From positions 310,001-374,000 of the forward strand of contig NW_002060969.1 in NCBI RefSeq assembly GCF_000150275.1: DNA of 64,000 nucleotides, given 5' to 3'. Shown here piece after piece: positions 3,785 through 22,484 of the stretch. The number at the start of each line of letters is the position of its first letter. The first letter of the stretch is position 1. The DNA is from Trichoplax adhaerens (Eukaryota; Animalia; Placozoa). The notes beneath the pieces are model-generated. The model was not told the DNA's origin. It saw only the letters and a program-made list of their open reading frames with translations, and did not search any database. A program made the translations under genes and the position numbers.

Positions 3785-4214
3785 GGGAAGCATACCGTAT
3801 CGGGCTGTGCTACAGTATACTGTAAGGTAATGTAAAGTAAATCAGATAAACACTGTTAGTAAAATGGAATAAAACAAAATAAACTAGTGCACGAAATCAT
3901 AGCAATATCTACTTTACCATAGTTAATTAACAATGATATTATTGTTAGGATTGCTAGATAGGTGTACGTGTACATGCGTCGAGTTTAGTTAATTAATCAC
4001 TAACGTGTAGAGTCAGTTAGTGCAGTACCATAACCTCACTTCTATCATATCATTGTAGAAGTGCAATCAAAATGACTCTTAAGTCTAAACTCGACTGCGT
4101 GCATTTATGTAATGGTATAGTGCAGGACATACTACCATATCTTATTAAAGCGTAGATAAATAATAAAAATTAAATTTGATTCCTATCCTCCACACGATTG
4201 ACTAATCTGTACCC

Positions 4215-4655
4215 TACTACTGTACAGTATACTGTACTGTACATGTACTGTACTAGTCATTACTGTACTGTAGAGTACTGTACAATGTGTACAGTGTATA
4301 GTACAATGTGTACAGTACAATATACAGTACAGTACACTGTGTACTGTACTGTACTGTACTGTACATAATAATGTAACTACTGCAGTTTCTACTGTATAGT
4401 GTACAGTACTGTACTGTACAGCAGAGTCTTGCAATGAGTGAAAACGCAACCCGAATCCGACAAAGCCCGAACACATTGTTGATTTTCTAACCCGAAATGA
4501 GTACAGTACAAATGCTATACAAATACTGTATCACCATAGAAATTCTTAACCCGAATCCCGTCTCGAGTCGGGGTTCAAGTCGGGTTTCGGGTTGACTATT
4601 AAGTCGACTACAGTACCGTACACTGTACTATACTGTACTGTACAGTACTGTATTG
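4215..4655. repeat. (TACTG/CAGTA)n pentamer island with embedded AACCCGAA direct and inverted motifs
   Basis: Dense tactg/cagta/tactgtacagta units. AACCCGAA at 4448, 4489 and 4548; inverted TTCGGGTT at 4586-4593. Confidence 0.85.
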
Positions 4656-6941
4656 ATGTTCGCAGTGATACAACATTTACAAAACAGAACATTTAAAACT
4701 AGGATTAGTAGCTTTTTTTACCAGAACAAAGCTCATACTTTCTCTAGCGAAGCTGCAACCTCCGTTAGTTTGAACATTACAGCATCGAAGATACTATGGC
4801 TACAGTGTCAGATTAGGTATGAGTCATTAACTTTCCTATTCCTATTACATATCGAGTTGCACACCGTTGCAAAATATGCTGGATGTAGCTTCCTACGTTT
4901 ACAGTATGACTGTTCTGAGAGGACTTTTCAGAATGTCGTTCGTTTAGGTGTAAATCTCTAACTATTTATAAACTCATTATTAACGTATTACTATGCTAGC
5001 GTCGTAACTTCTCATGAAAGCTTTCATACTGCAATAGTAGTCAGTCTTGAAAAATGTATTTTAAGGATTACAGTACAGTATTACGATTGATTATAGTTGA
5101 ATCAGAATTGTGGCTACCTCCCTGCTGTGTTTCATACTCGTAAATCAGCCTGCACCAGCTCAGGGCGCCCAACAGTATGTACTGTTCAGTACGTACCTGC
5201 AAGCTCAATGTTGCAGTACTGGACTGTACAGTACAATACTGTGACCGTACTAATTCACATACAGTAACTGTATAACCTTGCGTACTTACTACTAGAACTT
5301 GCAAAATCTTCCTAAAAGTAGGAATTTAATGGATGAATTCATGATTCGAAACAGTAAATTGTAGTCGAAACACGCAGGAAGTTTAATGTTTTCTACTATT
5401 AACTAATACTAAAGAATCCATTAAAAAGGCTAATTTAAACTATTGCTGCATTCTATACCTGATCTTATCGGCATAATAATTCTTTCTTTTTATTTTCAAA
5501 ATATCAGTGTTGCGTCAATCTGTCATTGCAACATCATTAATTAAACACTTATAAGCGTAATTACATTTGTCATTATGCAGTACAGTATAGTACGGTGAAT
5601 ATGTTACTGTAATTATTTCATTATCATGATTTATTTATTATACTAGACTGTAATTACAATACTCTGGTGTCTACTAATGAGAATTTTTAGCATAGCTTGG
5701 GCTGGCTTGTGCGCTCACGCTCTTGCAGGCTGAATTAAAGTCTACTGTAATCAACCCTCTTAATCAACACGCCTATCATGTTACGCTACAGTACGGTACT
5801 GGAATTCCCTAATTTCTACAGTCTGCACATATCTCTAATATCACTACAGTAAGTAGTACTGTATGTCAGCTACTAGGACCTCCCATGGTTTCTGTTTGTT
5901 CAATTTTGTTATTATTATTATAATAACTATGATAATATCATGGTATTTAAATTAAATACAGTAATACAGTATCTTTTATCAAGTCCCGTACTGAATTATT
6001 ACTGTATTTTTGGAATACAATAATACGTTCAGTAGTCATCATGGACTACCACGGAGTGCTGCTGTAGTAATACAGTATACATATATTATGTTGATGTGAC
6101 AGTAAGTAGGATAGCTTGAACGAAGTTTACAAAGAATTTTATGCAAAATGAATTAGGGTTACTGTACTAGTACTGATTCAGCGTATTATTATTTTCTTGA
6201 CTCTAGCAAGTCGTGGATAACTAGCTACAATGTTATTATGCTGTACACAAAGTACACAGATGTAACCCTCGAAGATGTGCAGTCATCGATAAATTTCCCA
6301 ATTTCTATACCTGTTCACAATATAGTCTTGGCATGTACTATACTATTTGTAAATAATTATAGTACTTTAACATTTACATACGCGTATATTAACAACAAAA
6401 CGTATTATCATCAATCCAATATACATTACGTAATGTAAGCGCTTAATAGGTTCTGCCAATTCGGGCAATATTCTATCATATGTGACATGCTCGCATTGTT
6501 CAGAGCTTAAGTTAGTAATAGATATTCATTAACATCGCAATGACAATAATCGTTTTAGATCAAGTTGACTCATCATTTTCCTCCGTTTTACCAAAGTTAG
6601 CTTGACCAGATTACCGTACTGTGTAATCAACAACTGTAACTCGGTTTAATAACAAATATATACTACAAACATACGCTAATAGGTTGTGTTTGACCATCAA
6701 TCGTACCATCTTCATGAATAGTTAACTGGCTATTGCTAGGCTTAGCCTGCCATTTTATTAAAGTGCTATATTAAAAGGAATATTTTGTATCTTATGAATA
6801 AGTCTTATCACTTTTATATTGAGGGTGTGAACTTATATCCAAACATAGTTCTGTCAGATCGGTATGCCGATAACAGTTATAACATTATCATTGTCTATAA
6901 GCTGATTGCGATTAATCGTCTACATAGAAAAAATTCTCGCC

Positions 6942-9900
6942 ATGAGTGATTTCGGAAAATTCGATGTAAGTCTGGAAGCTGATGTTGATCAGGCCCTATC
7001 TGCAGATGATAATTATATGTTGGAGACCTTATTTAGAGTTTGCGATGTACAATCAACGGGCGAAGTCCGTATATCCAAGATTATTTCATATTTAAAACAG
7101 AATGCTTTGCCTGATACTACAGAGGTATGCGATAAAATGTAACCTTTAATTCATTTAATGGCCTTTTATATCGCGGAAATGTCAACAAATTAGCTAACTT
7201 AATAGCCGTATTTAACCCTAATTATTAATTATTAGTCTGCGGAAGCTTTGGAAGAATTGGCGAGACTATTTGATCCAGGCAATGGAGACCCTCTCATTGC
7301 GAAAGATACGTACAAAAGAGTTATACGCCGCTGGATTTCATCTCTTAAATACAAAAAAAGTAATTTCAGGTACGATTCTTCACTTGGATTACGTCAAATG
7401 CTGTATGACCCTTTAAAAGAATTTGTTAATAATATTGCTATTATTATAATTAATTCAAAATTAGTTCAGAGTTTTCAGCAAATGCAGTGGTGGGAATTGA
7501 TCATCAAACGGTACGCGCTGTGGTGACCTAAGTGTTTTAATAAATTATGCAGTTATCTTTTTATATTGACTTATACTCGTACTGCCTTCTTGCGCCGTGA
7601 TTGTGTTAAGTTTTTACTTTAGCATTCTGACGACACTTAAGTCTACTGAAACTTCTTGATCGACGAAGTATGATTACTTATACTAGTAGATAAGTTATGG
7701 ATAGCTAATAAGCATATTTTGATACCAGGAAAATCCTAGAAGCAGTTATTTCGAAGAAATATGGAACAGTACTGATGAAGAAGGTATGCAATATTTATAT
7801 TGTTAGTAAACAAGACGAGTGAGTACTTTTGTTCATTAATGGATTATTTATGTAATATATAGTGTTCATCCTTTAAATTTTTAGTTGATAAATATATGAA
7901 AGAATTATACTTAGTTTTAATCGATACTAATGCTAACTTTTAATTAAATACGCGACAATTTTGCCCGCTAACTGCACACTCGACTAATGTGCAGTGCCTT
8001 CGTCTTCCTTCCTGGATATAACTGATCGGTAATTAGAGCATTCATTGATTTTTATTGTTAAGTTGATTCGATTATTTGTTGCTAAGTGAAGTTAATTTTT
8101 TACTTTAAAACTATAATAGTAGTTGTAAGTACGTATATTAGATACTTACTGAGTAGCATAGGCATACTGATATATATCAACTAACCGTTTAAATAAGTAA
8201 ATAATGAATCTTTTCTTATAGTGACAAAACTGTACTTCTAAGCAGAATGTCACAGCTCCAGTTGGAAAATAGAGAACTTTATAGACAGAGCAAGGAAGCG
8301 GTTTTACAGGTCTGGTTGAATCAAATTACCTTAGCATAAGCAGAAGTATAACGCGATGATGATAATACTTATCAATTGATTTGTTGATTATAGGTGGAGG
8401 CAATAGAAGATTCAAACCAGCAATTAGAACAAGAAATAAGTGAACTACGAAAAAAAGTCATAAGGTATAAGTCAATAAAGTTTTCTTGAATTCAGACTAC
8501 TGCTGTCTAGCTATTGACTCAGTGTTATTTACTAGTAATCAAAATATTGCTGAAAATAATAAGCATTTACTTGAGGAGAACGAAGAGTTAATGTCTACTG
8601 GTATGTGCATTTACAGTCTCTAATCTGTCTCTCAATCTTGTATACCTTTAGTTGTATTTTTTGTGCACTATTTTCAATCTTAAACTGGTAATTTTTAATG
8701 ATCTACTTCAGTTTCGGAGTTGCGCCAGGCAAAAAATAGAATTCAAGGAAAAAATGTACAATTGGTTAGTTTCATATCTATGAAGCTTTGTAACTTAGCG
8801 TAACTCTAGCACTTGTTGTTACTTTCAGGAGAGGGACAACATTGAACTTGAAAAGAACTTAAAAGAATTACATGAAATGGTAAGTTACCGTACCATGTTA
8901 ATTATCTACGTTTCCTTTCATTACTGTGGTGGAAAATACTACCAGTGTTTATTACTGATGTATTCTTTATGCATTCTTAAAGAAATGTATATATGTATTG
9001 AATGACTAGTAACTAACTTTTCGGCGGAATTCCCGATGAAATTACCATGATTAATTTTGGTTCACACGTATCATTCTTAGCTTGATAAGTCGTATTCGTC
9101 ACTGGAGGAATTGAAGACAGTAAAACAAGAAGCTTATCGAACGTTGGATGAGCATAAACAAAGTGTAAATATCTTGAAACTAGTGTATAGTCCACTTGCG
9201 ATATGCGGTATTGCAAAACTGCACCCTATTTAAATAAATCCGTTGCAAATTAGTGATTAGCAATTATTGTAATCAATTATAGAATATTGAGAATCTTAGC
9301 AGTTTATTTCTGACGACTCAATTATAGAAGCGATGTTCTCAAATTAATGGTTTTGTTTCTATAATTGCTAGAGATTTCAGACTGACTATCTAGTGCTTGA
9401 ACTTTCAAGTTTAAAAGCAGATTTGGCTCAGGTATGTATTTGTAAGGAGTATCATACAAGTATCTTAAAATTTTTTCATTGTTAGGTGACCAAATGTACT
9501 CTTCATTTTTACTATCATATAATCAATCACATTATATCGTTACAATGCATTATCAGTTTACTCTTTCAATTATGTAAGTAATTATCTTATTATTTATGTA
9601 TTACTTAAAGACACGATTATCAGCTAAGAGAACGGATGCTATCAATAACAAGTTGACAAACGAAAATGATTCTTTGCGTAAGATTATAGCTGACCTAGAA
9701 AAGGCCTTATCGGAGGAGTCGAATAAAAGGTATATCAAACACATTTTCTTGCTAACTTAGTTAATAGGAGTAGGTTACAGTATTTTCTCTTCCATTGGTT
9801 TGCATGAACATAAATTCTTTATATGTCGAAACTAGCTCTTTGCTCCTGCAGTAGTATCTTAATAGGAATAAATCATTGTTTGTATTACGGCCCGAATTTA

Positions 9901-12900
9901 AATATCAATCTCATAAATTGGTTTACTACCCCGTTGTAAGAATCCCATAAACTACACGAAAAATTGAGGAATGTACTGTGCATTATATTTACAATTGCTT
10001 ATGAGGAGTAATACGTATACCCACCAGTTGGGTACCGTATGATGATTTTACATCTAAATTCAGATATCTGAAACAGTTTTATAATGATCAAGCGATAAAT
10101 TGCATTGATATAGCTCCTATGATATTTAAATGTCACCAATATCATTTCTCATATTAACAGAGTACTTTGGCAACACGACAATATGTTAAATACGGCAAAT
10201 GAAAACGGTCAGTCACTACACAGCGAAATACAGTCAGAAATAATTTCTGGATCTCACAGAGGCAATATTATTTTGCCGTTACCATTATGTGATACGGATC
10301 CAAGGAGAATCTTAATGACTTGTCCTGAAGTTAATCAGCCTTTCTTAAAAGACTTAGAAAGTTACGCCGATAGGTGTGTCGAAGAAATCTTTGCATGTAT
10401 ATATGATAGAAATGGAAAGAACTCAACATATGGTAAAAATTTCGGAAATAGAAATTATAGCACTACCTTGAATGTAGAAATCCACGAAATTAAGCATGAC
10501 CCAGAAGTACTTTTTGCGACAACACTCGTTAATGGAATATTTAAGGATATCTTTACTAGATATACTGAACTGATTAGCGCTAGTATCCGAAAGTATGACC
10601 ATCAAAGACCGAGCGCCTCTGGAAGTGTCGATATTAATATCACTAGCAATTCCATTGACAGTTTTGTTAATATCTCTCTAGATAGCTCAATACCAAAAGA
10701 TGGTTACAGTATCATTGCAGGACAAGCTGTAAGTCTGTCTTATAATTAAAACTTGATTTACTTTAGGCACGTTAATAACAATATAATACAACTCCTTTAC
10801 TATAGCTAATAAACTATTAAAATAACGGCTTGTTCTTGAATTTATCAACTTACTCAAATTATTTATTCTTGTTTAGGCAACGGTCTTTGAAGAAAAAAAG
10901 GTAGCTGTTCTCAATCAAATAACGCATCTACTTTCGTCGTCACCAAATATCGAAAGAGAGGTAATTTATTCATGATTAATATTACACTCCGATATGGCTA
11001 TTAATATTGATAGATGGCTCATTTGATTGGTGAATTAAATTTCCAGGGTATCTGCCGAGACTTAGAGAACGAGTTAAATAATTTTTCGAATAAAATTTCC
11101 GTATTGGCTTATTCTAAAAACAAATTAGAAAAAAGGTACGGTGATTTAATATTCACTAAGTAATAAGTCGGTAAATATGATTACTGAATATAATGTATGA
11201 ATGGAAGACAAATATTATAACAACAAACCCTTACAACGATAGCTCTTTAGTTTTTTCTATCATATTATAATTCTGCTGATTAATTATTAATGTGCTAATA
11301 AATAGGGATATATTTCTTATAAGGGTAGAGTTCGAGATCAGGATTAATTATGGATCTGTAATATTAAAATGATTAGATTGATGAATTGTATATTAGAGTA
11401 TAGCTAATGAATATTGTTGGCGATCTTATATACGTGTATTTGGCAGTACCCTAGCTGGAAATATTAGTGATTAGAATCCGAATCTAACGTACTAATAGCG
11501 ATTTATTAACCTTCAAATAAAATTTGAATAGGCTAGCTTCAGTGAATTTGTTACTCGAGAAGTTACGAGGTATGAAAGAGATAAAGCTTTCCTATTGATG
11601 CGTTTTGTAATTCCACCGAAACCGTAGCTCTTAACTGCGTAAAATTTTAGGTCTCTTAAAACTATGTACGCTGCTGTTATATCGTAGTTAGGTACTAGTA
11701 CATTTTACCTTTTAATTCAGAAGTAATCCTAATGCTTTCGAAGTTCGTTAAGTGAATCCAATCTAATTGCAGCAGGACCTAATCACCGTCATAAATACGA
11801 TATTGTACTAGACAATGTCAATCGCTGTATTCTTACTGAATTATTGGCAATTGCGCTCCACATTGCTTTTTCAATTCAAAGTTATGATAACAAGTTATTA
11901 TTTTGAAGTTTCTGTAATTAAATGTTGATTTTGATCGTTAACGTTAACTCTTTCAGAGGAAAACAATAGCTTGCGATATGAATCTCGAATACTGGCAGAT
12001 AAACTTAATAACTCTAGGCATTACGCTATAAAATTGGAATTAAGGTAAGTTGGTAAATCAAAATGCAACCTAACCGACTTACTTAAAGGCCTTATTTTAG
12101 TGCTACTAGTTATACATTCAGTACATGAGCAAGCACCTTTACATATATTCTTAGTTTAGGATGGATAAGAAAGCGCTACATTTTATGTTTATTCTGCAGT
12201 AGCGTATAAAGTAAGCATTTCGCATTTCACAATTTTTGCATCGGGTTTACCGTAAGATGCATATTGTAAGTTTTAATTTATTTACGAATAGAATTAAGCA
12301 CATAATTCGAGTACATTTTTGTATCAATGCTAATGAATTTATTAGGTATCTGTTGTGATTGTAATATAGTATATATTTATTCCAGATACGGTGTCAACAT
12401 TGATACGAGGAGTTTACTTTATTAACCGTGCTTACTTCTTACTTATTTGTGCGATCACTGACCAGACAAGCTGCCGGATTGACGGATAATTATAATTGCA
12501 ACTAATAATACATAACTTAGCAGCGATACTTCATGCAATACAGCGTATAATTAGCTGTTTCATATAAACCTAGCTTTGCTTTGCATAATATTCATTGTTC
12601 GTAGCAATTATTTACATCCAATGCAAAATCTGGGATATTAGTCAGAATTCAGAAATTTGTGAACGCGCATTTGCACAGCAAATCTTTGGGTACAGCTTAT
12701 AGATTGTTTCACAGGTTTATTGTACTGACAATCACACCTAGTAGTAGATTCATAGTTAGCTATACAGCCTATATTGTATCATTAATAACCGTTTGAACAT
12801 CAACAGACCATCTTGGTACAATTCTATCAAGATTTTAATGAGCCATAAATCTATTTAGAACACAGAGATTTTTGAAGAACAGCTCCAGGAATAATGTACC

Positions 12901-14156
12901 GCATAAAAGATGCCTACCTAAACACCCTTATTGATAATGTTGGGTATTCTCTACATTAATCGTATATAGTTCGCATCTAATTCTTACCCTTCAGTCTTGC
13001 TGACATTTACTTTTACTTACTAATCTTAAATTTATAAATATTCATACAATAACATGTCTATTCTATTTTTACCCTAATAATGTATTTAAATCCACTTTAC
13101 CTTAACATGCGCTGGATAGTGGGGACTCTAAAATTTCTAGCGTAACTGTGAGGTGCATTGCGGTAGCCTACCGTAAATCAGGGCGCAGATTATAACAATT
13201 ATAGATTTAATTAAGACGGAATTCTATAAACAATACCATACTTCAGTTCTACATTTATCGTAAAGTACATTAATGTGGATATACATCGCACATTCTCCGT
13301 ACATCTGTATATCCAATTCTCTATATAATATCTTCTACATAACAGAATTCTATAAACAAATACCTTGGTTCAGTTTTTTATTTATCGTGCAGTATAATCA
13401 ATGTATACTATTTCTGGATCATAGTACGGAGGCGTCTATATCGACTAAATATTAAGAACTAGTTTCATACGCATATATTTTAGCTTGTTTTCCGTATGGT
13501 CTGCAATTGCGAAGAATTATCTGGATGATTTATCAATTGCAATCACTATATTTACACTATATTTGCGTATTTAGCTAATTAGTCTATGCTCATATCACAT
13601 AATAATCATTTTTCATATATATACAGTATAGTAATTTTTAGATTATAATTAATAATTTCCTCACTGACTCATCTACTCAGTACTTCGTAGGGATTTACAA
13701 ACATAAAAATTTTTGCCCAAACTGTATACAGTAGTCAGTAGGTAAATAAATAAATAGTGACAGTAAATTACGGTAATGTAATGTACTGTATCATGTGCAC
13801 TTGTGCAGTACTGTACAGTACTGTACAGTACATTACATTACCTTACCATAATACTGTACTGTACACTGTACAGCATGTACTACTGTACATTCATGGACTG
13901 CTAAAAGAAGACCTGGACCCACAGGTCTCGTTTTAACCTTACCGCATAATACAGTACAGTACATTATACGCTTCTGTACTTTAATCGTACTGCATCTACT
14001 GTACAGTACTGTAGAGTGAAAAAGCCGTTATGGACTTTCTATGGTTTTTTCTTACTAGTGCTGCAGTGTACAGTATGTATAGTACGGCATTATTTGAAGA
14101 AGAATGACCAGTGATACTAATATACTATACAATTGTCGGTTTCTGGCACAGATTAC

Positions 14157-14195
<39 letters not shown>

Positions 14196-17100
14196 GTATG
14201 AATGAGTGGGTAAGAGTGTTCCACATAGCTAAAAATGGAGAGTTACTGTAAGATTAGAGAAATGCGGTATGTATATCAGTATATGTCATACACTCTACTA
14301 CTACACAGTACACGGTATAAAGTTACTGAACCTCTGACAGGTCTACGACAAATGGTAATACTATCTGTTAAATGAGCACATTATCGTAAACCGTCAGCAA
14401 AGCGACGGGAGTTTGCACTAGTGCTGCTAAAACAGTTATTCACCTTCAGTACATTTGTCCAAACATATCTGCCAATTCTTAGTAAAATTAACCAAGATTT
14501 TAAGATCTTGGTTCATTTCGTTAAAACTTGGCGAATTTGTTTAAATAAGCACTGTACAGTACAGTATAACGAAGGTACTGTATACAGTACAGTACAGTAC
14601 AGTAGAGCCGTTTCAGCCGCATTTTTGGATAGTGTACAGTACATGCGGTACAGTACTTGTAGTCCTTTTGGTACTGTAATTGATTTCTGTATTCATTTAC
14701 AGCAAAGGTAGTGTACAGTACACTACCGTATTTACGAATAAATACTGTACAGTACAGTACTCGGTAATTTAGGATGATTCAGTCAAAGGCACGTAAGTCA
14801 TGTTGTAGCTAGCTCACCGAATCGGTTCTTTCCCATCGAAAACTAAGACGTTAGTCTAATCTATTAATTTTTAAGTATGAATTACCGCGATGTACTATAC
14901 TGTATGTGTAGTACTTACTTTCGTACTGTTTCTTTCCAGGTTACTTTCGATCAGTATCTGCTTTACTTTCCTAACAATAAAAATTAATTATTATTTGCAT
15001 ATACTGTACTGTATACCGTATACAGATTCTAATTTTCTGATAAACTTATTACACTACTGTGCAATGTACATACCTTTATACAGCAAGAAGGTGATTCACC
15101 TTATTGAATATACGCGTAACAATTACATATTAATAATAGCAAAAGCGAAATACAGTAACTACACGTCTTAATTGACTTCTAGCATAGTGTATGGCTATCT
15201 GCTGTACGGATCTTTTATAAATTTATCTTGTTCTATATTACTGTATGGTGTATAGCACTATAAAAAAAAACCTTTTAATAGTCTTTACGATTCAAATTGT
15301 TGAAAGCAGGATTACTATTAGCATGTTGTTGTAGCTTTTGTTATGCATACAGACCCTTTTAAGATACTATATTATAGTCGGTAAAAATTCATTGATGGTT
15401 TCAGATAGACCCATATTATGCTCCGTAGAAGCCAACTTATATCACTGTTATGAAATTTCTATTCTGTGCAGCTTTCCTATTACTCAATTTTTTTGTTACT
15501 GAATGCAACTGTATTTCCTGATGCGTTATTTACGTTATATTCTTTTGTGATTACAATATCTAAATTATCTTCTTTTGTACGATTATGTGATTTTAGGCTT
15601 GATTCATTGCAATCATCCCTGGTTGAGGAACGAGATAGATGCACTATTTTGGAAGCAGAAGTTGGTAGTTAATCGCAGTAGATATTTGGCTAAAATTTAC
15701 TACTTACATAACGGCCCTCTTTTTATCTTGTCTTCGGTAGCTGAAAGACTTAAGAATATCCACCCTGCATCAAAGGTACAAGGGCTCGATACTATTTTGA
15801 CCTGCATGTCTAATTTCATATGTTATCACTGTTACGTGAAGATACCAGCGTGCTCAAAGTACTTATGGGCTTGTGATAGTATCATACAGTATAACTAGCT
15901 GGAGTACAATATTACCTATACGAATTCAGATTATGCTTGCTTGTTGCTGTAGTTGTAGCTGTAGCATGTTATCGTGCTTATTGACTAGTGATAGCGTAGA
16001 AAAACTTACTACTATAATCAATTCGTAGAGAGTAGCGAAATTTCTGTTTCTTCTTTACTCAAATGTATATTACATGCGCACAGTTTATCAGACATTCAGT
16101 TGTTACCATTAAGTAGATATGGATCTACTGTAGAATAGCTGCTAGCAATGATCACTGATTCTAACCCTAACCCTTTAATTTCAATATTTAGTGACAAAAT
16201 CAAAGCACTCACCACATCCCTAGAAACACAGGTATATTACAGGCCTTTGATGTGGTAGATGTCCTTCTATAACATTTGAATTACAGTTTTCTTGTCAATT
16301 GATATAATACGGTTATTTAATATTAAAACTTTACTCAACTGGGAAGTAAAAAAGCTTTATTCTTTAAGATGAATTATAGATCGAGCTTGGATGAACAGTT
16401 CAAAGAATCAAAACTGTATGAGAATCCAGATGAGTCTTCTTATTAATCTGATTCTGAGGCCAAATGTAGTTGTATTTATTACACGGCATAATAATTTTTT
16501 ATAGCTTTTATTAAATTACGTAAATGAACTAAACTTGTTGCTTTGTAAATGTTCTTTCTCAAATATAGGAATAACCGCGATCTTCAAGCGCAAAACTTAT
16601 TGTTAACTGGTATTACATTTTTGTTAACAAATTGAAATTTAGTGTACATTTCCTTGATAATCTACTGAATATTAGGAACTTCCCTTGTGAAGCCTCAATT
16701 CGTTGATCAAACATTATATTCGTCGTAGTTAATACTGATAAATAATTCACTGAATAACTTTTGACCAATTTTGACTTGATTGGCGAATCATTTTTGCTTT
16801 TATTGAACGTAATGAATCAGTGTATGGCAGTTTTCATGCTAGTTATAGTGATGTGAAAGATTAAACTTCTGTATTTTTATAACAACTTACATTTATCGGT
16901 ATCCGTTTCATTATTTTATACTAGTATTGCTAACCGTTATCAATGCTGTGTAAACGTTTTGTAGATCAATTATCGGAGCTACAACGTGAGCTTGAAGTCC
17001 TAGGAAAAAGAAACTGGGAATTGGAGGTTAGTTGAAATGTCAATTGTAATATTGTACTTGAAAATCTTGCTTCAAATATGGCTGCACCATTGGATAACGT

Positions 17101-20100
17101 TCTAGAGATCTCTCGAACTTGCGACTTCACGGTATGGAAAGGATCAAGAGGATATCACAGGTTTTGAGGAAAGAAGCAAGCGATGCGCTACCGATAATGA
17201 GGTAAGATTGCTAATTTGATATATTAAATGTAATTGTTGGACCTCATGATAAGAACCACGTATAATGGAGTATAGATATGAAAATAACTTTATTACATTT
17301 CACCATGTAATATACCTCACCGAAGAAATACCAATTACCTGTGCAAGTAACAGTGTTCCTACTATCTGTTAGTTTACATCGTAAATGCATATATCTGAGC
17401 GTATTATCCTTTCAGCATTCTTATGTAATTAAATGGCTTTGGGAACTGTTTTCCTTAGTCATGAAATAGCTATACTGTAGTGATTAGAGACATGGTGTTG
17501 GGGTTTAGAATATCAATTTTATTTCGTAACCCAAAATGCAGTTGCATGATAATTGCCTTTTGAAAGATCCAGGATACTATTATCTGCAAGGCTGATACAG
17601 TGATTTCGTTGTAGTAGTTATTGGCGTACTGTTATGAAATATTTCTAGATAGCAATTTGTTATATTTGTCTTATTAGCTGCAATGTCACCTAAAGTGCCT
17701 GCGGTAAATATACGGTGAATACAATGAGAACGTTGCCTCATGCTACAGTATATCAATAACCTTTGTATAAATATAAACATTACCTAGGAAAGCCAACGCC
17801 CCCTAGCTCGCGCTTTACCAACGCTTGATAACGATGATGCCTTCTCGATATCTGAAAAGCAGCTGTTAGCCTTTAAAGAGATGATCTCAAAGATTGATAG
17901 GACCACGTTTTCGGATACTCGTATCATTGATAACCTAACTAAAGAATTTGTTGAACCAGTCTACATCACCTTATCTCGGAAGCCATTCTCGAAGGCTTCT
18001 TTTGGAGTCATCTGTCCAAACATAGGTCGTCTGCCTGTAATTTCGCTGGATAGCGAAGAACAGCAAACCGTTAGTTCTTATATGCAGAGTAGTTCTTCCA
18101 GGAGCACTACCGGTTTACATTTATTCAGTATTATTAGCAATTCCACAGAATTAGCAGAAGATGTAACCAATTGTAATCAAAAGTCCAGCGCGAATATTTA
18201 CATACAGACCGAGATTGCAAATTTGCAAGATGTATCTGTCCAAACCAATCAGCAGAAAGATGTCGTTTACCAACATTATTTTTTGACAGATCCTAAGCTT
18301 ACGTTGGATGTGGCATGCCAAACAGATATTCCTGTTGATTCGGAATATGTGAATCAAATTGATTCTGATAGTCTTAGCCAAGTTACTTCTATTCAAAGAA
18401 CATTGAATGAATTTAAGAAAGTTGATGAAGACAAAGGTAACCTCAAATACGAATGACTTGCTTATTGTAGTTCCTAAAATTTTAATTAGAATTTTTACCA
18501 GCTTACCTTTAGGATCAGGTATACTTATTCTTCACGAAATTTATAGAATTAACATTAAGAAATCATTTTCTTTAAGACTAATTATAGTAATATGCGAAAT
18601 ATATTTCTTTACTAACGGTAAAAGTTTCGTTTTTTTTATTTGCTATTAATAATCTATTTATGGAAAGGCAGGAGCTGCAAGATCATTTCTAAATTATTCT
18701 TGTTCTTAGTTGTGTTGCTTATCGATTCAAATATTATTCGATTTTTCTATAGAAATTATTAGGTTATCTGCAATGGAGAAATGGAAGCACAGTGTTAGGC
18801 CGGCATTAGGCTCCATTGCACAGAGTGCATTTGAAGAGTCAGAGGAAATACTTAAAGGAGCAAAAGGTTCATATCTGACAGAACTGAACTATGTACTTGT
18901 GAAGCATTAAGTCTCTATAAAATTTGAAGTAGTTTGTATTGAAGGTTTAGGCATACATACTGATATGCTTATACATTGTATTAGTGCTTCATTTACATTT
19001 CACAGCTTTTCAAATTGTAATTCAGTTAGGATGCGGAACCGTTGTTTAAATTTTAAGATTTTTGAGGCTATTAACTTGTATCGTTGTCAAGAGTGTAAAC
19101 AAACTCAAACTCCGAAGCATTATTGAACATCCGTTTTATTACTCATCCCTACTATACAGCATTAATACTTTGATTATGCTTACTATTAACTATGCAAACT
19201 TCAAATAGTTATTTGCATCTACTTAAATATCATTCAGCAGATAAAAGCATTTATCGTCTCCGATGTGAATCAGATCCTCAGGCGAAAAAGTTAGGCATGG
19301 CTGACATTGCTGCTACATTTACTAAAAGTGCTCGCAAAGTTGTGAATAACGCGAAGACAAACTCTATGCTAAGATCTGCAACATTCAGAGAATCTACGTA
19401 CGTGATAAGATTTTAGTCAAAGCATTACATGAAAGATACGCAGAGAGTTCAAAGTGATTTTGATGTTAGCTTGGTTTACTGTAGTCTTAACAGTTTATTA
19501 CATGTGATGAAAATATGTTGAGGATTTTCGCTGTAGGTCCTTAGTATTTTTTCCTTAGTTTGGAGCTTGCATGATTATACACATGTACAGTAGATAATAT
19601 CCATAACTCACTGGTTGTGAACTAAAATTTATTAATCATTTTATTAGGTGGGATACCTACGACAATATTGAGGTTTGGAATATATACTCTATACTGCTTC
19701 GGATATTCTTTCTAGAAATCATTTAAATATGAAATGTAGATCTCATTATCAGAAGTGCTAGATCCAGATTTAATAGTATAAATGTCTATTCGTCAACACG
19801 CTCAGGATCGTTACACAAGATTAGTGTTAGCATTCAAAACGGATCAGTCAACGATGTCGGTTAGATTATCTTCACAGGTGCTGCTAATTTGTAGTATTTA
19901 CGGTTAATTCCTGTAATTTGCTCTATAAGGATAAGCACCTTTTGTATCTTAGGAGCGTAGCTTAAAGCTAACGGAATCGAATGCCAATAAGGAAATTATT
20001 GACCTTAGAAATGTTATAAAGGTGCTTAGCAATAAGAAAAATCTATGGCCGACTGAGCACGCTTGCGTAACTAAAATGTTTCAGTACAACAATTGAGCCG

Positions 20101-22484
20101 TACTCAAATAAATCTAATATATATATTTTAATGGCTGAATCATCGTCACTTAATAAATGTAGCGGCTATGTATTTAGTTATAGATTTACAACCGTACGTA
20201 ACCCGATTTAATAGTTTCATAACGAAGATTCTCAATTTATTAAACTATTTGTGTTTCGGACAGATTTTGAATCGATTGATTACAGATCTTAGAATAAAGG
20301 TAATAAGCTTACTTTCTGGTTCGAGCATAATTCAGAATGACGTTTCTCTCATAAATTCATCTTTATATACTAGGAGGTTATTCGAGCGGCGGAAGACTAT
20401 ACTGACGTTCTGGAAAAATGCCTTTCCAGGATAATCAGCAAAGCTGAAAGTCTTGGTAGCGTTCAACAAGTAAGTGATTGTTGATTTCCTAAAGATTCTG
20501 ATCTCAAGACCTTGTCCTCATAAATTTGTAAATTTTAACCATTTTTATCTTTTATACTAATTATACTTTCATTTAGGAAGAAAATCTAAGCATGTCCATT
20601 AAAATACTTATATCATACTCAGAGCATTTGAAGCGACAAATTGCCGGACAAAAAGAAGAACTTGAAGAAGCAAGGTTAGACTTTACAAAATTCGAAGTTT
20701 CTTAGAAGAACAGAATTGTTCCTTTTGTAATACAGATTGTAATTTATCTCTATAAGAAAACGGCGTGATGAGCAAGCCCTGCAGAATACCGCTCTTCGTA
20801 CTATAGGAGCAATGCCGTCAATACAAAGTTAGACTGTATTTATAATCAATCTTGATTCTCCACTATAATTCTGAATATTTCCCGTTGCCTGCAATAATTC
20901 AGTAGTATTTGTAGCGGATATATAACTAAACTGATATGATCTTAGTCGGTATTATGCTAATTAGGCTATTAAAAATTTAATACAAAAACAGCATCACATG
21001 CTAGACTAAGGCATCGAAAAGGTGTCACTTCAACAGATCCGATTCATTCTCAATCCCCAAGGGTAAGTTTTATGTTGAGATCTCACTGAAGTTACAAAAC
21101 ATTGCATGCTTATTTAGCTAAAATTCGGTAAAAATTGTCGCATGACAGTCTTAAGATTTCTTAGAAGCGAGAAAACTGCGTATCCGAATTTTTAATAATT
21201 CTTCTTTAAAACTTATCGAAGTTGATGACATGTCTGTTCGTTATCGTACAATAGCTTGATCGTCGACAATCACTTGGACAGTCCTTTGCGCAAATGGCTT
21301 TTAGAGCAGCGCAAGCAATCGGTTTACAAGAAGAAGAAGAAAAGGAAGGTGCTGAAAAACAAGAAGTTGTAAAAGGACCTATGAGAAGGTATTGCACCTA
21401 GACATAATTCAGGCATTATGCTGCAGTAGAATATGCTGCTAATAACATCAATCTTTATCTGATAACGACTCTGATGATTAAAAGCAATGAATAAATCTGC
21501 TACTCTAAACGTGACAGGTCGTCATATTAACAGTGTTATAATACAGTTTGTCGTAGTGATATTAAAATAGGATCACTCAAAATTACAATTTAGGAGACGA
21601 GGGCCAGTGATTGGTGCTATTGTCGAGGAAAATCCAGATAGTAATTTGGAAATCGTAAATCAAGACAATCACGAAGACGCTACCACCAATAATACAGACA
21701 TTTACCAGCAAGGGTATAATATTATGAAGGCACTGCAAACTAGTGTCTGGCATAAAATCATTTATTACTTGTGTGTTATTACAGATTTGAAAAAGGATTA
21801 CAGACACGGATTAGTAATGAAATGGAAGAGATGCATGAACAGCAGGATGCTATTGAAGCAAATGTTCGTATGCTAACAGAAAGGTAAATCAATCAATCTG
21901 TTCAACAAGTATCTCTGAGGAATTTCTACGCGTATTCTTGAAAGGAATTAGAATATTTCGCAAAATTAAATAGTACGCGTTTATGGCGAATTAGTTTTGA
22001 TCAACTGTACAGGTTAACATTAAATGTAACTTTTTTTCAACTAGAGCAAATGTTTTAGAAGAGAAATTTACAACAAATGATATAGAAAAGTAAGACCACT
22101 TATGAACTCATGATGTTTTGTAACTTATGTAAAATTTTTGTATATAAGTTTTGTTCTATTTAATTAATGAAGCTGAGATTGTTTAAAATTTACAGATTAT
22201 TTAAAAATAGAAATGATAATGCTACTTCGAAAGACATGATACACGAAGCAGGTAGCTGGCGTGAGGAATTTCTCATATCCTGCAATAATATATTGTTGAA
22301 TTATCGATGTTGGATGCAGAGCAAATACGGGAAGAAATTGTTTTGGTTCCTCTTTTTTATCGCCATTTTTATGCTGATCTGCATCTGGTATTTACCTTTA
22401 AGTAACCTGGCGAAACATGTAGCTAGCATCAGCCATAGCTATTTATCGTCAACAAGAAGTCGAGAGCCACCAACTCCTACATAA
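6942..22484 (+). CDS. KASH5/LRMP(IRAG2)/IRAG1(MRVI1)-family tail-anchored nuclear envelope/ER protein: EF-hand pair, coiled coils, MRVI1 domain, TM helix, KASH-like tail
   Basis: Exons 6942-7124 and 7236-7369 give LETLFRVCDVQSTGEVRISKIISYLKQ...LEELARLFDPGNGDPLIAKDTYKRVIRRWI, resembling the KASH5 EF-hand pair. Many short coiled-coil exons follow. Exons ~19650-20674 give DRYTRLVLAFKTDQSTMSVRLSSQERSLKLTESNANKEI...SKAESLGSVQQEENLSMSIKILISYSEHLKRQ (MRVI1/LRMP signature). The last exon ends KKLFWFLFFIAIFMLICIWYLPLSNLAKHVASISHSYLSSTRSREPPTPT*. Phase is preserved across the 12045-15596 intron. Confidence 0.85.
13790..14070. repeat. (TACTG/CAGTA)n pentamer island inside the large intron of the KASH/LRMP-like gene
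   Basis: Units such as cagtactgtacagtactgtacagtac near 13806-13831. A second patch lies at ~14550-14760. Confidence 0.8.
14159..14189. repeat. (TA)n microsatellite
   Basis: About 15 consecutive TA units. Confidence 0.95.
14351..14421 (+). mobile_element. Helitron-like 3' terminus (non-autonomous remnant), copy 1
   Basis: Hairpin CCGTCAGCAAAGCGACGG (14391-14408), a 9-nt spacer, then CTAG (14418-14421) followed by T. About 70 bp is shared with 47303-47384. Confidence 0.65.

What the first reader, a model, noticed from the sequence alone, without database searches (positions are those of the whole stretch)
6942..22484. One gene combining KASH5, LRMP/Jaw1 and IRAG architecture: candidate ancestral LINC/dynein/IP3R adaptor in a basal animal
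Seen: N-terminal KASH5-like EF-hand pair, extended coiled coils, a clear MRVI1/LRMP domain, a C-terminal TM helix and a ~30-residue luminal tail ending PPTPT with no luminal cysteine. Known: vertebrates distribute these parts among KASH5/CCDC155 (meiotic LINC component and dynein adaptor), LRMP/IRAG2 and IRAG1 (IP3R regulators); the long zebrafish Lrmp (futile cycle) keeps both ends and attaches centrosomes to pronuclei. Inference: this is a full-length ancestral-type member that may couple the nuclear envelope, dynein and Ca2+ release. If the source is a placozoan it would also be a germline/meiosis marker in an animal whose sexual cycle is poorly known. The PPTPT end is a variant of the PPPX KASH terminus.
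Basis: partly seen in the sequence, partly recalled or inferred. Interest (0 to 1): 0.85.

Follow-up and report, generated by a model that had tools for sequence, protein, structure and literature searches.

The report
Placozoan KASH5-type tail-anchored dynein adaptor
A single 37-exon gene in what is almost certainly Trichoplax encodes a roughly 1,420-residue membrane-anchored protein with the dynein-binding front end of the vertebrate meiotic protein KASH5. This puts that protein family at the base of animals, but its claimed LRMP/IRAG (calcium-release regulator) part rests on one weak match.

Summary
The gene is real and is one gene. Pfam EF-hand_9 (the KASH5-type EF-hand pair) matches exons 1 and 2 above its curated cut-off, and this is the only such locus in the 105.6-Mb genome. 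Exons 1-15 are each conserved in another placozoan-like genomic contig. RNA contigs from two RNA-seq runs splice 12044 to 15597 (GT..AG, in frame) across the 3.55-kb intron, and seven neighbouring introns are also spliced. That rules out "two genes".

My 37-exon model gives 1,421 residues:
- two proline-free heptad regions;
- a conserved Spindly-like motif about 18 residues after the first coiled coil;
- one hydrophobic helix in the whole protein;
- a 29-residue, cysteine-free tail ending PPTPT.

The "clear MRVI1 domain" is not confirmed. Only exon 20374-20469 matches PF05781 (14.6 bits, cut-off 27). None of 65 control coiled-coil pieces matched it, so the hit is suggestive and no more. KASH_CCD hits are non-specific in this genome, and Pfam KASH and solved KASH5/KASH6 peptides do not match the tail. 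Exons 24-37 are ab initio.

The combined KASH5+LRMP layout is already known from zebrafish Fue/Lrmp (Horn 2013). This is a new, deep-branching member of a known kind. SUN, dynein and IP3R binding are all untested.

The parts
6942..7124 (+). Exon 1: start codon and first EF-hand. Loop at 7044-7079, with D and Q at the X and Y positions and K at -Z.
   Evidence: Pfam EF-hand_9 49 bits, profile 1-35. 81% aa identity in relative contig L011, where conservation begins at 6939.
7236..7369 (+). Exon 2: second EF-hand. Loop at 7272-7307, with D at -Z and P at position 7.
   Evidence: Pfam EF-hand_9 38.3 bits, profile 36-66. Conserved in L011 up to the GT donor at 7370.
7740..8028 (+). Two micro-exons (7740-7783 and 7995-8028) linking the EF-hands to the coiled coil.
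   Evidence: Both conserved at protein level in L011. Canonical splice sites.
8222..9729 (+). Eight exons of coiled coil 1 (residues 132-329), proline-free.
   Evidence: Each exon is conserved in L011 at 63-84%. Heptad score is above the 99% shuffle level. The KASH_CCD hit on 8394-8486 (17.9 bits) is non-specific.
10161..10728 (+). Exon 13 (189 aa), a non-coiled region with conserved islands.
   Evidence: 54% identity to L011 with long invariant runs. AlphaFold model unusable, pLDDT 36.5. No Pfam hit.
10213..10230 (+). Spindly-like motif SLHSEI, 18 residues after coiled coil 1.
   Evidence: S-L-H-x-E-I-Q-S-E-I is invariant between the window and L011. Its position parallels the putative Spindly motif of human KASH5 at 371-376, after a coiled coil ending near 349 (PMC10071310).
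10877..12044 (+). Exons 14-17, the first half of coiled coil 2.
   Evidence: Exons 14-15 conserved in L011. Joints 11135>11532 and 11569>11957 seen in X9, X12 and X11.
12045..15596 (+). Intron of 3,552 nt (GTAAGT...TTTTAG) with CAGTA-pentamer repeat islands at about 13800-14760.
   Evidence: Joint 12044>15597 in RNA contigs of X9 and X12, with the frame kept. Tandem CAGTA/TACAG arrays.
14881..15596 (+). Intron 3' end that is contiguous with exon 18 in some RNA contigs. It is a possible alternative first exon or a retained intron.
   Evidence: X11 contig covers 14881-15660 and is then spliced 15660>15741. It holds 13 upstream ATGs.
15597..17026 (+). Exons 18-23, continuing coiled coil 2.
   Evidence: Five GT..AG joints in RNA contigs of X9, X12 and X11. 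One continuous frame.
17106..20021 (+). Exons 24-29 (ab initio), including the 649-nt Ser/Thr-rich exon 17788-18436.
   Evidence: Splice-site and codon model. In-frame codon score is the best of three frames for every exon. No RNA or comparative support.
20374..20469 (+). Exon 30: the only MRVI1-like segment, inside a heptad-rich stretch (residues 1090-1141).
   Evidence: PF05781 14.6 bits, E 0.014, profile 250-283 of 533. 0 of 65 control coiled-coil pieces hit MRVI1. It is 1 of only 9 family hits among 64 open segments of the 3' half.
20577..22089 (+). Exons 31-36 (ab initio). Exon 21011-21062 is doubtful.
   Evidence: No Pfam hit.
22196..22484 (+). Last exon: juxtamembrane region, transmembrane helix (22335-22394), luminal tail (22395-22481) ending PPTPT, and the stop codon.
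   Evidence: Hydropathy and composition. No hit to Pfam KASH or to solved KASH peptides.

Best explanation
Window 6942-22484 (+) is one 37-exon gene for a protein of about 1,421 residues. It is the placozoan member of the KASH5 / zebrafish Fue(Lrmp) family.

Inferred mechanism:
- The C-terminal helix inserts the protein, tail-anchored, into the ER and outer nuclear membrane.
- The short proline-ended luminal tail is held by a SUN protein in the perinuclear space.
- In the cytoplasm, the degenerate (probably Ca2+-independent) EF-hand pair binds helix 1 of the dynein light intermediate chain.
- The following dimeric coiled coil and the Spindly-like motif engage dynactin.
- The protein therefore recruits and activates dynein at the nuclear surface, for centrosome-nucleus attachment, nuclear or pronuclear movement, and possibly meiotic chromosome-end movement.

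A distal coiled-coil segment may be homologous to the IP3-receptor-binding coiled coil of LRMP/IRAG.

Shown here: gene unity for exons 1-23, the EF-hand_9 domain, the coiled-coil character, the single tail-anchor helix, and the tail composition.
Inferred: exons 24-37, all binding partners, and localisation.
For: - EF-hand_9 lies above the Pfam cut-off on two consecutive exons, co-linear with the profile, with no generic EF-hand family hit.
- This is the only locus in the genome above that cut-off.
- The EF-hand loops carry D/Q at X/Y of hand 1 and D at -Z of hand 2, as described for human KASH5 (PMC10071310).
- Exons 1-15 are conserved exon by exon in contig L011 of a relative, while the introns are not.
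- Eight GT..AG joints in RNA contigs keep one reading frame from 11047 to 17026. They include 12044>15597 in X9 and X12.
- The X12 contig carries 1,652 letters upstream of 11045. The model predicts 1,636 coding letters back to the ATG.
- There is a single transmembrane helix followed by a 29-residue tail. Three of the last five residues are proline, p about 1e-4.
- MRVI1 was the only family hit for exon 30, and it is absent from 65 control pieces.
- Fue/Lrmp shows that the same layout exists in fish and binds dynein (PMC3787381).
Against: - The MRVI1 match is 14.6 bits against a cut-off of 27, on one exon only. The last exon, which the Pfam model should also cover, has no match.
- KASH_CCD hits of this size occur in many coiled-coil genes of this genome and even in prokaryote controls.
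- The terminus is PPTPT, not PPPX.
- Neither Pfam KASH nor the PDB KASH5/KASH6 peptides match.
- The Spindly-like motif has H where F or A is usual.
- Exons 24-37 have no RNA or comparative support. The joint over the large intron has 30 letters on its short side and comes from one study.
- No homologue outside placozoan-like contigs could be retrieved.
Confidence: 0.7

Rival explanations
1. It is a KASH5-only orthologue. The protein is an EF-hand/coiled-coil/tail-anchor dynein adaptor with a long lineage-specific linker, and the MRVI1 exon match is a chance coiled-coil hit. In that case it says nothing about LRMP/IRAG or Ca2+ release.
For: - Only one exon matches PF05781, and it is below the cut-off.
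- The six-frame genome search found nothing.
- Spurious hits at E 0.003-0.1 to coiled-coil families are common: about one per 40-residue control piece.
Against: - 0 of 65 controls hit MRVI1.
- In the 3' half only 9 family hits arose from 64 open segments, and one of them is exactly the family predicted from Fue/Lrmp.
- The match lies in a heptad-rich stretch about 230 residues before the membrane helix.
Confidence: 0.3
2. It is a tail-anchored ER or Golgi dynein adaptor that is not a LINC component. The proline-rich end is not a SUN ligand, and the protein positions ER or other organelles rather than the nucleus.
For: - The terminus departs from PPPX.
- There is no sequence similarity to any KASH.
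- Mammalian LRMP is largely ER-resident (PMC10298018).
Against: - Tail length (29 residues), the absence of cysteine as in KASH5 and LRMP (PMC3787381), and the proline enrichment right at the C-terminus are KASH hallmarks.
- A canonical multi-exon SUN gene exists in the genome.
Confidence: 0.2
3. These are two adjacent genes, or the single gene is an assembly or annotation artefact: an N-terminal soluble EF-hand coiled-coil gene and a separate C-terminal membrane-protein gene.
For: - The 3.55-kb gap is far larger than the other introns.
- An RNA contig in X11 runs unspliced from 14881 into exon 18.
- Exons 24-37 are ab initio.
Against: - The spliced joint 12044>15597 has canonical ends and keeps the frame in two RNA runs, continuing one coiled coil.
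- Downstream contigs chain exons 18-23.
- The N-terminal part alone has no membrane anchor.
Confidence: 0.04

Closest known systems
Zebrafish Futile cycle (Fue/Lrmp)
   Same: One polypeptide with an N-terminal KASH5-like EF-hand and coiled coil, a long middle part, an LRMP-type region, a single C-terminal membrane helix and a short luminal KASH tail. It binds dynein and attaches centrosomes to pronuclei (PMC3787381).
   Different: The LRMP/MRVI1 homology is only weakly detectable here. The terminus is PPTPT. The source is a non-bilaterian animal. No function has been tested.
Mammalian KASH5 (CCDC155)
   Same: - EF-hand_9 pair with degenerate Ca2+ ligands.
- A coiled coil directly after it.
- A Spindly-like motif about 20 residues after the coiled coil.
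- A tail-anchor, and a luminal tail lacking the nesprin cysteine.
   Different: This protein is about 2.5 times longer (1,421 against roughly 560 residues). It has a second coiled coil and a Ser/Thr-rich region. Its tail does not end PPPV. KASH_CCD could not be shown specifically. Meiosis-specific expression is not shown.
LRMP/Jaw1/IRAG2 (KASH6) and IRAG1/MRVI1
   Same: Type II tail-anchored membrane proteins with a cytosolic coiled coil that binds IP3 receptors, and a short luminal tail that is KASH-like in LRMP (PMC10298018, PMC10827754). One exon here matches the MRVI1 profile inside its central region.
   Different: The match is below the Pfam threshold. There is no match to the juxtamembrane part, no evidence of a PKG-interaction region, and the vertebrate proteins lack the EF-hand front end.
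EF-hand dynein activating adaptors (CRACR2a, Rab45, FIP3, ninein)
   Same: An N-terminal EF-hand pair followed by a long dimeric coiled coil, the layout that binds dynein LIC helix 1 (PMC10071310, PMC9242646).
   Different: Those adaptors are soluble or Rab-linked. Here the cargo end is a membrane anchor. The Pfam assignment here is to EF-hand_9 and to none of the generic EF-hand families.
C. elegans ZYG-12
   Same: Outer-nuclear-membrane KASH protein that recruits dynein for centrosome attachment, pronuclear migration and meiotic pairing (functional analogue; PMC3787381).
   Different: From my own knowledge, ZYG-12 is a Hook-family protein and has no EF-hand_9 pair. It is not homologous in the dynein-binding part.

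Membership tests
KASH5 / Fue family | N-terminal KASH5-type EF-hand pair (Pfam PF14658 EF-hand_9 above the gathering score) | tested here: met
   49 and 38.3 bits on exons 1 and 2, cut-off 37, profile 1-35 and 36-66. It is the only locus above the cut-off in the genome. Caveat: EF-hand_9 can also be reached by unrelated EF-hand proteins (P0003, P0004), but those also hit generic EF-hand families more strongly, and this gene does not.
KASH5 / Fue family | KASH5 coiled-coil domain (PF14662 KASH_CCD) directly after the EF-hands | tested here: inconclusive
   One exon scores 17.9 bits, cut-off 43.3. Equal or better hits occur at five unrelated loci of this genome and in four prokaryote controls. 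The coiled-coil character itself is clear.
Dynein activating adaptor | Spindly motif (L-[F/A]-x-E) shortly after the first coiled coil | tested here: inconclusive
   S-L-H-S-E-I lies at residues 347-352, is invariant in the relative, and sits in the right place. It has H instead of F or A.
Dynein activating adaptor | Binding of dynein LIC helix 1 and activation of motility | not testable with these tools
   The EF-hand pair is split over two exons, and joined sequences could not be submitted.
KASH proteins | Single C-terminal transmembrane helix followed by a luminal tail of about 40 residues or fewer that ends the protein | tested here: met
   Only one hydrophobic window in 1,421 residues (1373-1392), and a 29-residue tail.
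KASH proteins | C-terminal PPPX motif, or a match to Pfam PF10541 | tested here: not met
   The tail ends P-P-T-P-T. No PF10541 hit at E<=10. No match to solved KASH peptides. Proline enrichment at the terminus is nevertheless significant.
KASH proteins | SUN-dependent localisation at the nuclear envelope, or SUN binding | not testable with these tools
   The genome's canonical SUN domain is split by introns, so no unaltered reference could be given to complex prediction.
MRVI1 / LRMP / IRAG | Pfam PF05781 at or above 27 bits | tested here: inconclusive
   Exon-wise the best score is 14.6 bits on 20374-20481, and no other exon matches. 0 of 65 control pieces hit it. The joined protein was not searched.
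MRVI1 / LRMP / IRAG | Coiled coil that binds IP3 receptors; PKG-I-beta interaction and phosphorylation sites (IRAG1) | not tested

The most novel reading that the evidence does not exclude
The one placozoan gene already makes both vertebrate-type products. The first is a long KASH5/Fue-like dynein adaptor from the 6942 start. The second would come from a promoter inside the 3.55-kb repeat-bearing intron: a short form lacking the EF-hands and starting at the Met that opens exon 16369-16415 (757 residues), that is, an LRMP/IRAG-like tail-anchored protein. Vertebrates would then have resolved a two-promoter gene into separate KASH5 and LRMP/IRAG genes.
Probability: 0.15. Interest if true: 0.75.

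Novelty: new member of a known kind. Interest (0 to 1): 0.5.

Why it matters
KASH5 is treated in the literature as a vertebrate or mammalian meiotic LINC component. No paper in the searchable library mentions it together with Trichoplax or Nematostella. The fused KASH5+LRMP layout has been discussed only for fish.

A placozoan gene with the KASH5 EF-hand pair, coiled coil and tail-anchor would mean that the membrane-bound EF-hand dynein adaptor dates to early animals. That fits the finding that its nuclear partners TERB1-TERB2-MAJIN are also pan-metazoan (PMC7227075).

It also gives a concrete, testable candidate for nucleus-centrosome coupling, and possibly meiotic chromosome movement, in an animal whose sexual cycle is poorly known. 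If the MRVI1 homology holds, it would make the long Fue-type form the ancestral state of the KASH5/LRMP/IRAG group.

Tried and rejected
- **Representatives search.** Exon 1 against 1.8 billion representatives gave only two placozoan-like fragments and two unrelated EF-hand proteins.
- **The search for homologous proteins.** Exon 25, the tail exon and exon 27 found nothing. The length window excludes full-length relatives, so this says little.
- **Metagenome scans.** A scan for the spliced junction and one for relatives of the tail exon found nothing.
- **ESM Atlas.** No usable hit for the tail, and only generic EF-hand clusters for exon 1.
- **PDB hit 9r9a_B.** It matched the membrane region at E 0.0023, but it is a Salmonella contractile-injection-system protein. 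I rejected it as a chance hydrophobic match.
- **Pfam KASH hits elsewhere in the genome** (L017, L018) are junk with in-frame stops.
- **Best Sad1_UNC hit in the genome** (L013). It lies mid-way in a 1,618-residue open frame that, by my reading of the translation (no domain scan was run), looks like an E3 ligase and not a nuclear-envelope SUN protein.
- **AlphaFold on exon 13** was unusable, pLDDT 36.5.
- **Internal-promoter idea.** It is supported only by run X11. The putative first exon carries 13 upstream ATGs, and in X9 and X12 the same stretch is at ordinary intron background.
- **Complex prediction** was not run, because neither partner can be given as an unaltered reference.
- **Joined model.** The joined 37-exon protein was not sent to any search tool. 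It was built only inside scripts, for coordinates, hydropathy and heptad statistics.


Full report
**What the window is**

The window is AT-rich, 31-37% GC. It lies in a 105,631,681-bp assembly of 1,414 contigs. From memory that size fits Trichoplax adhaerens, and other agents of this scan reached the same view. The run names are coded, so I could not confirm the species directly.

**Front end**

- Translated by reference, 6942-7139 and 7236-7523 each match a single Pfam family, EF-hand_9 (PF14658). Exon 1 covers profile positions 1-35 at 49 bits and exon 2 covers 36-66 at 38.3 bits; the curated cut-off is 37.
- No generic EF-hand family appears. For ordinary EF-hand proteins that also reach EF-hand_9, the generic families score far higher (P0004).
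- A six-frame search of the whole genome finds no other locus above the cut-off.
- The first loop has D and Q at positions X and Y and K at -Z. The second has D at -Z and P at position 7. These are the kinds of departures described for human KASH5, which does not bind calcium but needs the EF-hand fold to bind dynein LIC (PMC10071310).

**Gene model, exons 1-15**

- The representatives search with exon 1 returned two short proteins, 77-80% identical.
- These led to genomic contigs of a related organism. One of them, L011 (5.7 kb), spans the equivalent of 6939-11138.
- blastn and tblastn show islands of conservation that coincide with every exon I propose between 6942 and 11135, including the micro-exons 7740-7783 and 7995-8028. 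The introns are not alignable.
- Conservation starts 3 nt before the ATG at 6942, so that is the start codon.

**One gene or two**

- I laid contigs of four runs on 11000-16999. X9 and X12 are recorded as RNA-seq, from one study. X11 is a guessed RNA run from another study.
- These show eight joints, all with GT..AG ends once the stated offsets are applied: 11135>11532, 11569>11957, 12044>15597, 15660>15741, 15775>16192, 16231>16369, 16415>16569 and 16609>16965.
- Joined, they give one open frame of continuous coiled-coil sequence.
- The joint across the large intron is seen in X9 and X12 only, with 30 letters on its short side. In X12 a contig that covers exon 18 from 15595 and carries the downstream joints overlaps the 30 letters beyond the joint. 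This is what a 31-mer unitig graph would give where spliced and unspliced forms branch. The word length is my inference, not a tool statement.
- The X12 contig has 1,652 letters upstream of 11045. My model needs 1,636 coding letters back to the ATG. This fits a transcript that starts just upstream of 6942, but I did not see those letters.

**Exons 24-37**

- These rest on a splice-site and codon dynamic programme, refined by hand.
- The programme missed five small RNA-proven exons further upstream, so small exons may be missing here too.
- With a codon table trained only on exons 1-23, all 14 distal exons score best in the model's frame. Thirteen exceed the 90th percentile of open intronic segments. 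This is partly circular, because a similar score helped choose them.
- Exon 21011-21062 is doubtful.

**The protein (1,421 residues in this model)**

| Residues | Feature |
|---|---|
| 1-106 | EF-hand pair |
| 132-329 | Coiled coil 1, no proline |
| 347-352 | S-L-H-S-E-I |
| about 330-518 | Non-coiled region with conserved islands |
| 519-747 | Coiled coil 2, no proline |
| 748-964 | Ser/Thr-rich region |
| 1090-1141 and 1281-1323 | Heptad-rich stretches |
| 1373-1392 | The only hydrophobic helix |
| 1393-1421 | 29-residue tail, no cysteine, ending P-P-T-P-T |

- The motif at 347-352 is invariant in the relative. It sits where human KASH5 has its putative Spindly motif, but it has H where F or A is usual.
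- With 2.25% proline overall, three prolines in the last five residues has p about 1e-4.
- The tail does not match Pfam KASH or any solved chain, including the KASH5 and KASH6 peptides.
- By primer sequences in Horn 2013, mouse KASH5 and human LRMP both end PPPV. The PPTPT end here is a variant, not a member, of PPPX.

**The MRVI1 claim**

- Exon by exon, only 20374-20481 matches PF05781: 14.6 bits, E 0.014, profile 250-283 of 533.
- Re-scans at E<=10 of all exons, and of all 64 open segments of the 3' half, added nothing.
- The six-frame genome search had no candidates.
- As a control I scanned 65 forty-residue pieces of unrelated coiled-coil proteins from the same genome. They produced about one spurious hit each, to 70 different families, and none to MRVI1.
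- In the 3' half only nine family hits arose at all, and one is the predicted family. I read this as suggestive, with a chance probability somewhere between about 4e-4 and a few percent depending on how many families attract coiled-coil noise. It is not a "clear" domain.
- The KASH_CCD hit on exon 6 is not informative. Five unrelated loci score as well or better, and prokaryote controls ring too.
That is the obvious missing test.

**What is already known**

- Horn et al. 2013 (PMC3787381) described zebrafish Fue/Lrmp as LRMP with a KASH5-like N-terminal extension. They showed that LRMP and KASH5 are SUN-dependent KASH proteins lacking the nesprin cysteine. They suggested an ancestral fish gene that was duplicated and trimmed.
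- The dynein-adaptor mechanism of KASH5 is established (PMC10071310, PMC9242646).
- TERB1-TERB2-MAJIN were traced to Placozoa (PMC7227075).
- I found no paper that mentions KASH5 with Trichoplax or Nematostella. Almost nothing exists on "KASH5-like" proteins of invertebrates.
- The architecture is therefore known. The placozoan member and its depth are new.

**Function**

The best-supported reading is a tail-anchored outer-nuclear-membrane/ER dynein-activating adaptor. Every binding step is inferred from family membership and layout. Spliced transcripts were assembled in runs from two studies, so the gene is expressed. Nothing shows germline restriction.

**Short isoform**

- In X11, one contig runs from 14881 through exon 18 and is spliced at 15660>15741. 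This could be an alternative first exon.
- In X9 and X12, the same stretch is at ordinary intron background. The stretch holds 13 upstream ATGs before the first in-frame Met at 16369.
- I keep this as the novel case, at low probability.

**Verdict**

Noticed in passing
window 13800-14760: Repeat islands built from CAGTA/TACAG pentamers and a (TA)19 run inside the large intron. Contig depth there is 10-100 times that of the flanks in all four runs, and many contigs break or rejoin there, so the element is multi-copy.
   Followed up: partly
window 14881-15660: In run X11, one contig covers the last 716 nt of the large intron contiguously with exon 18 and is then spliced to exon 19. It is reported at higher contig depth than the upstream exons. 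It could be an alternative first exon or a retained intron, and it holds 13 upstream ATGs.
   Followed up: partly
window 10161-10728 and L011:4550-5122: The 189-residue exon between the two coiled coils has long invariant runs between two placozoan lineages, for example a hydrophobic helix around residues 115-132 of the exon and its last 17 residues. It has no Pfam match, and its AlphaFold model is very low-confidence. This conserved region has no counterpart that I could name in KASH5.
   Followed up: partly
L019 (G000:C1414:11304000-11313999), open frame 3926-8779: A 1,618-residue stop-free open frame carries the genome's best Sad1_UNC match in its middle. By eye it looks like part of an E3 ligase and not a nuclear-envelope SUN protein. 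No domain scan was run.
   Followed up: partly
L020 (G000:C1408:1752000-1761999), hits at genome 1757531-1757653 and 1757867-1757977: A multi-exon gene with two co-linear Sad1_UNC matches. It is the likely canonical SUN partner for any KASH protein of this animal.
   Followed up: no
L021:3-5675:- (G000:C1412): Part of a giant, intron-poor coiled-coil open frame (3,357 residues according to the genome search), used here only as a negative control.
   Followed up: no
window 11000-16999, run X5: Run X5 covers exons and introns evenly, shows no splice joints, and differs at scattered single bases. It behaves like genomic DNA of a closely related strain rather than RNA.
   Followed up: no
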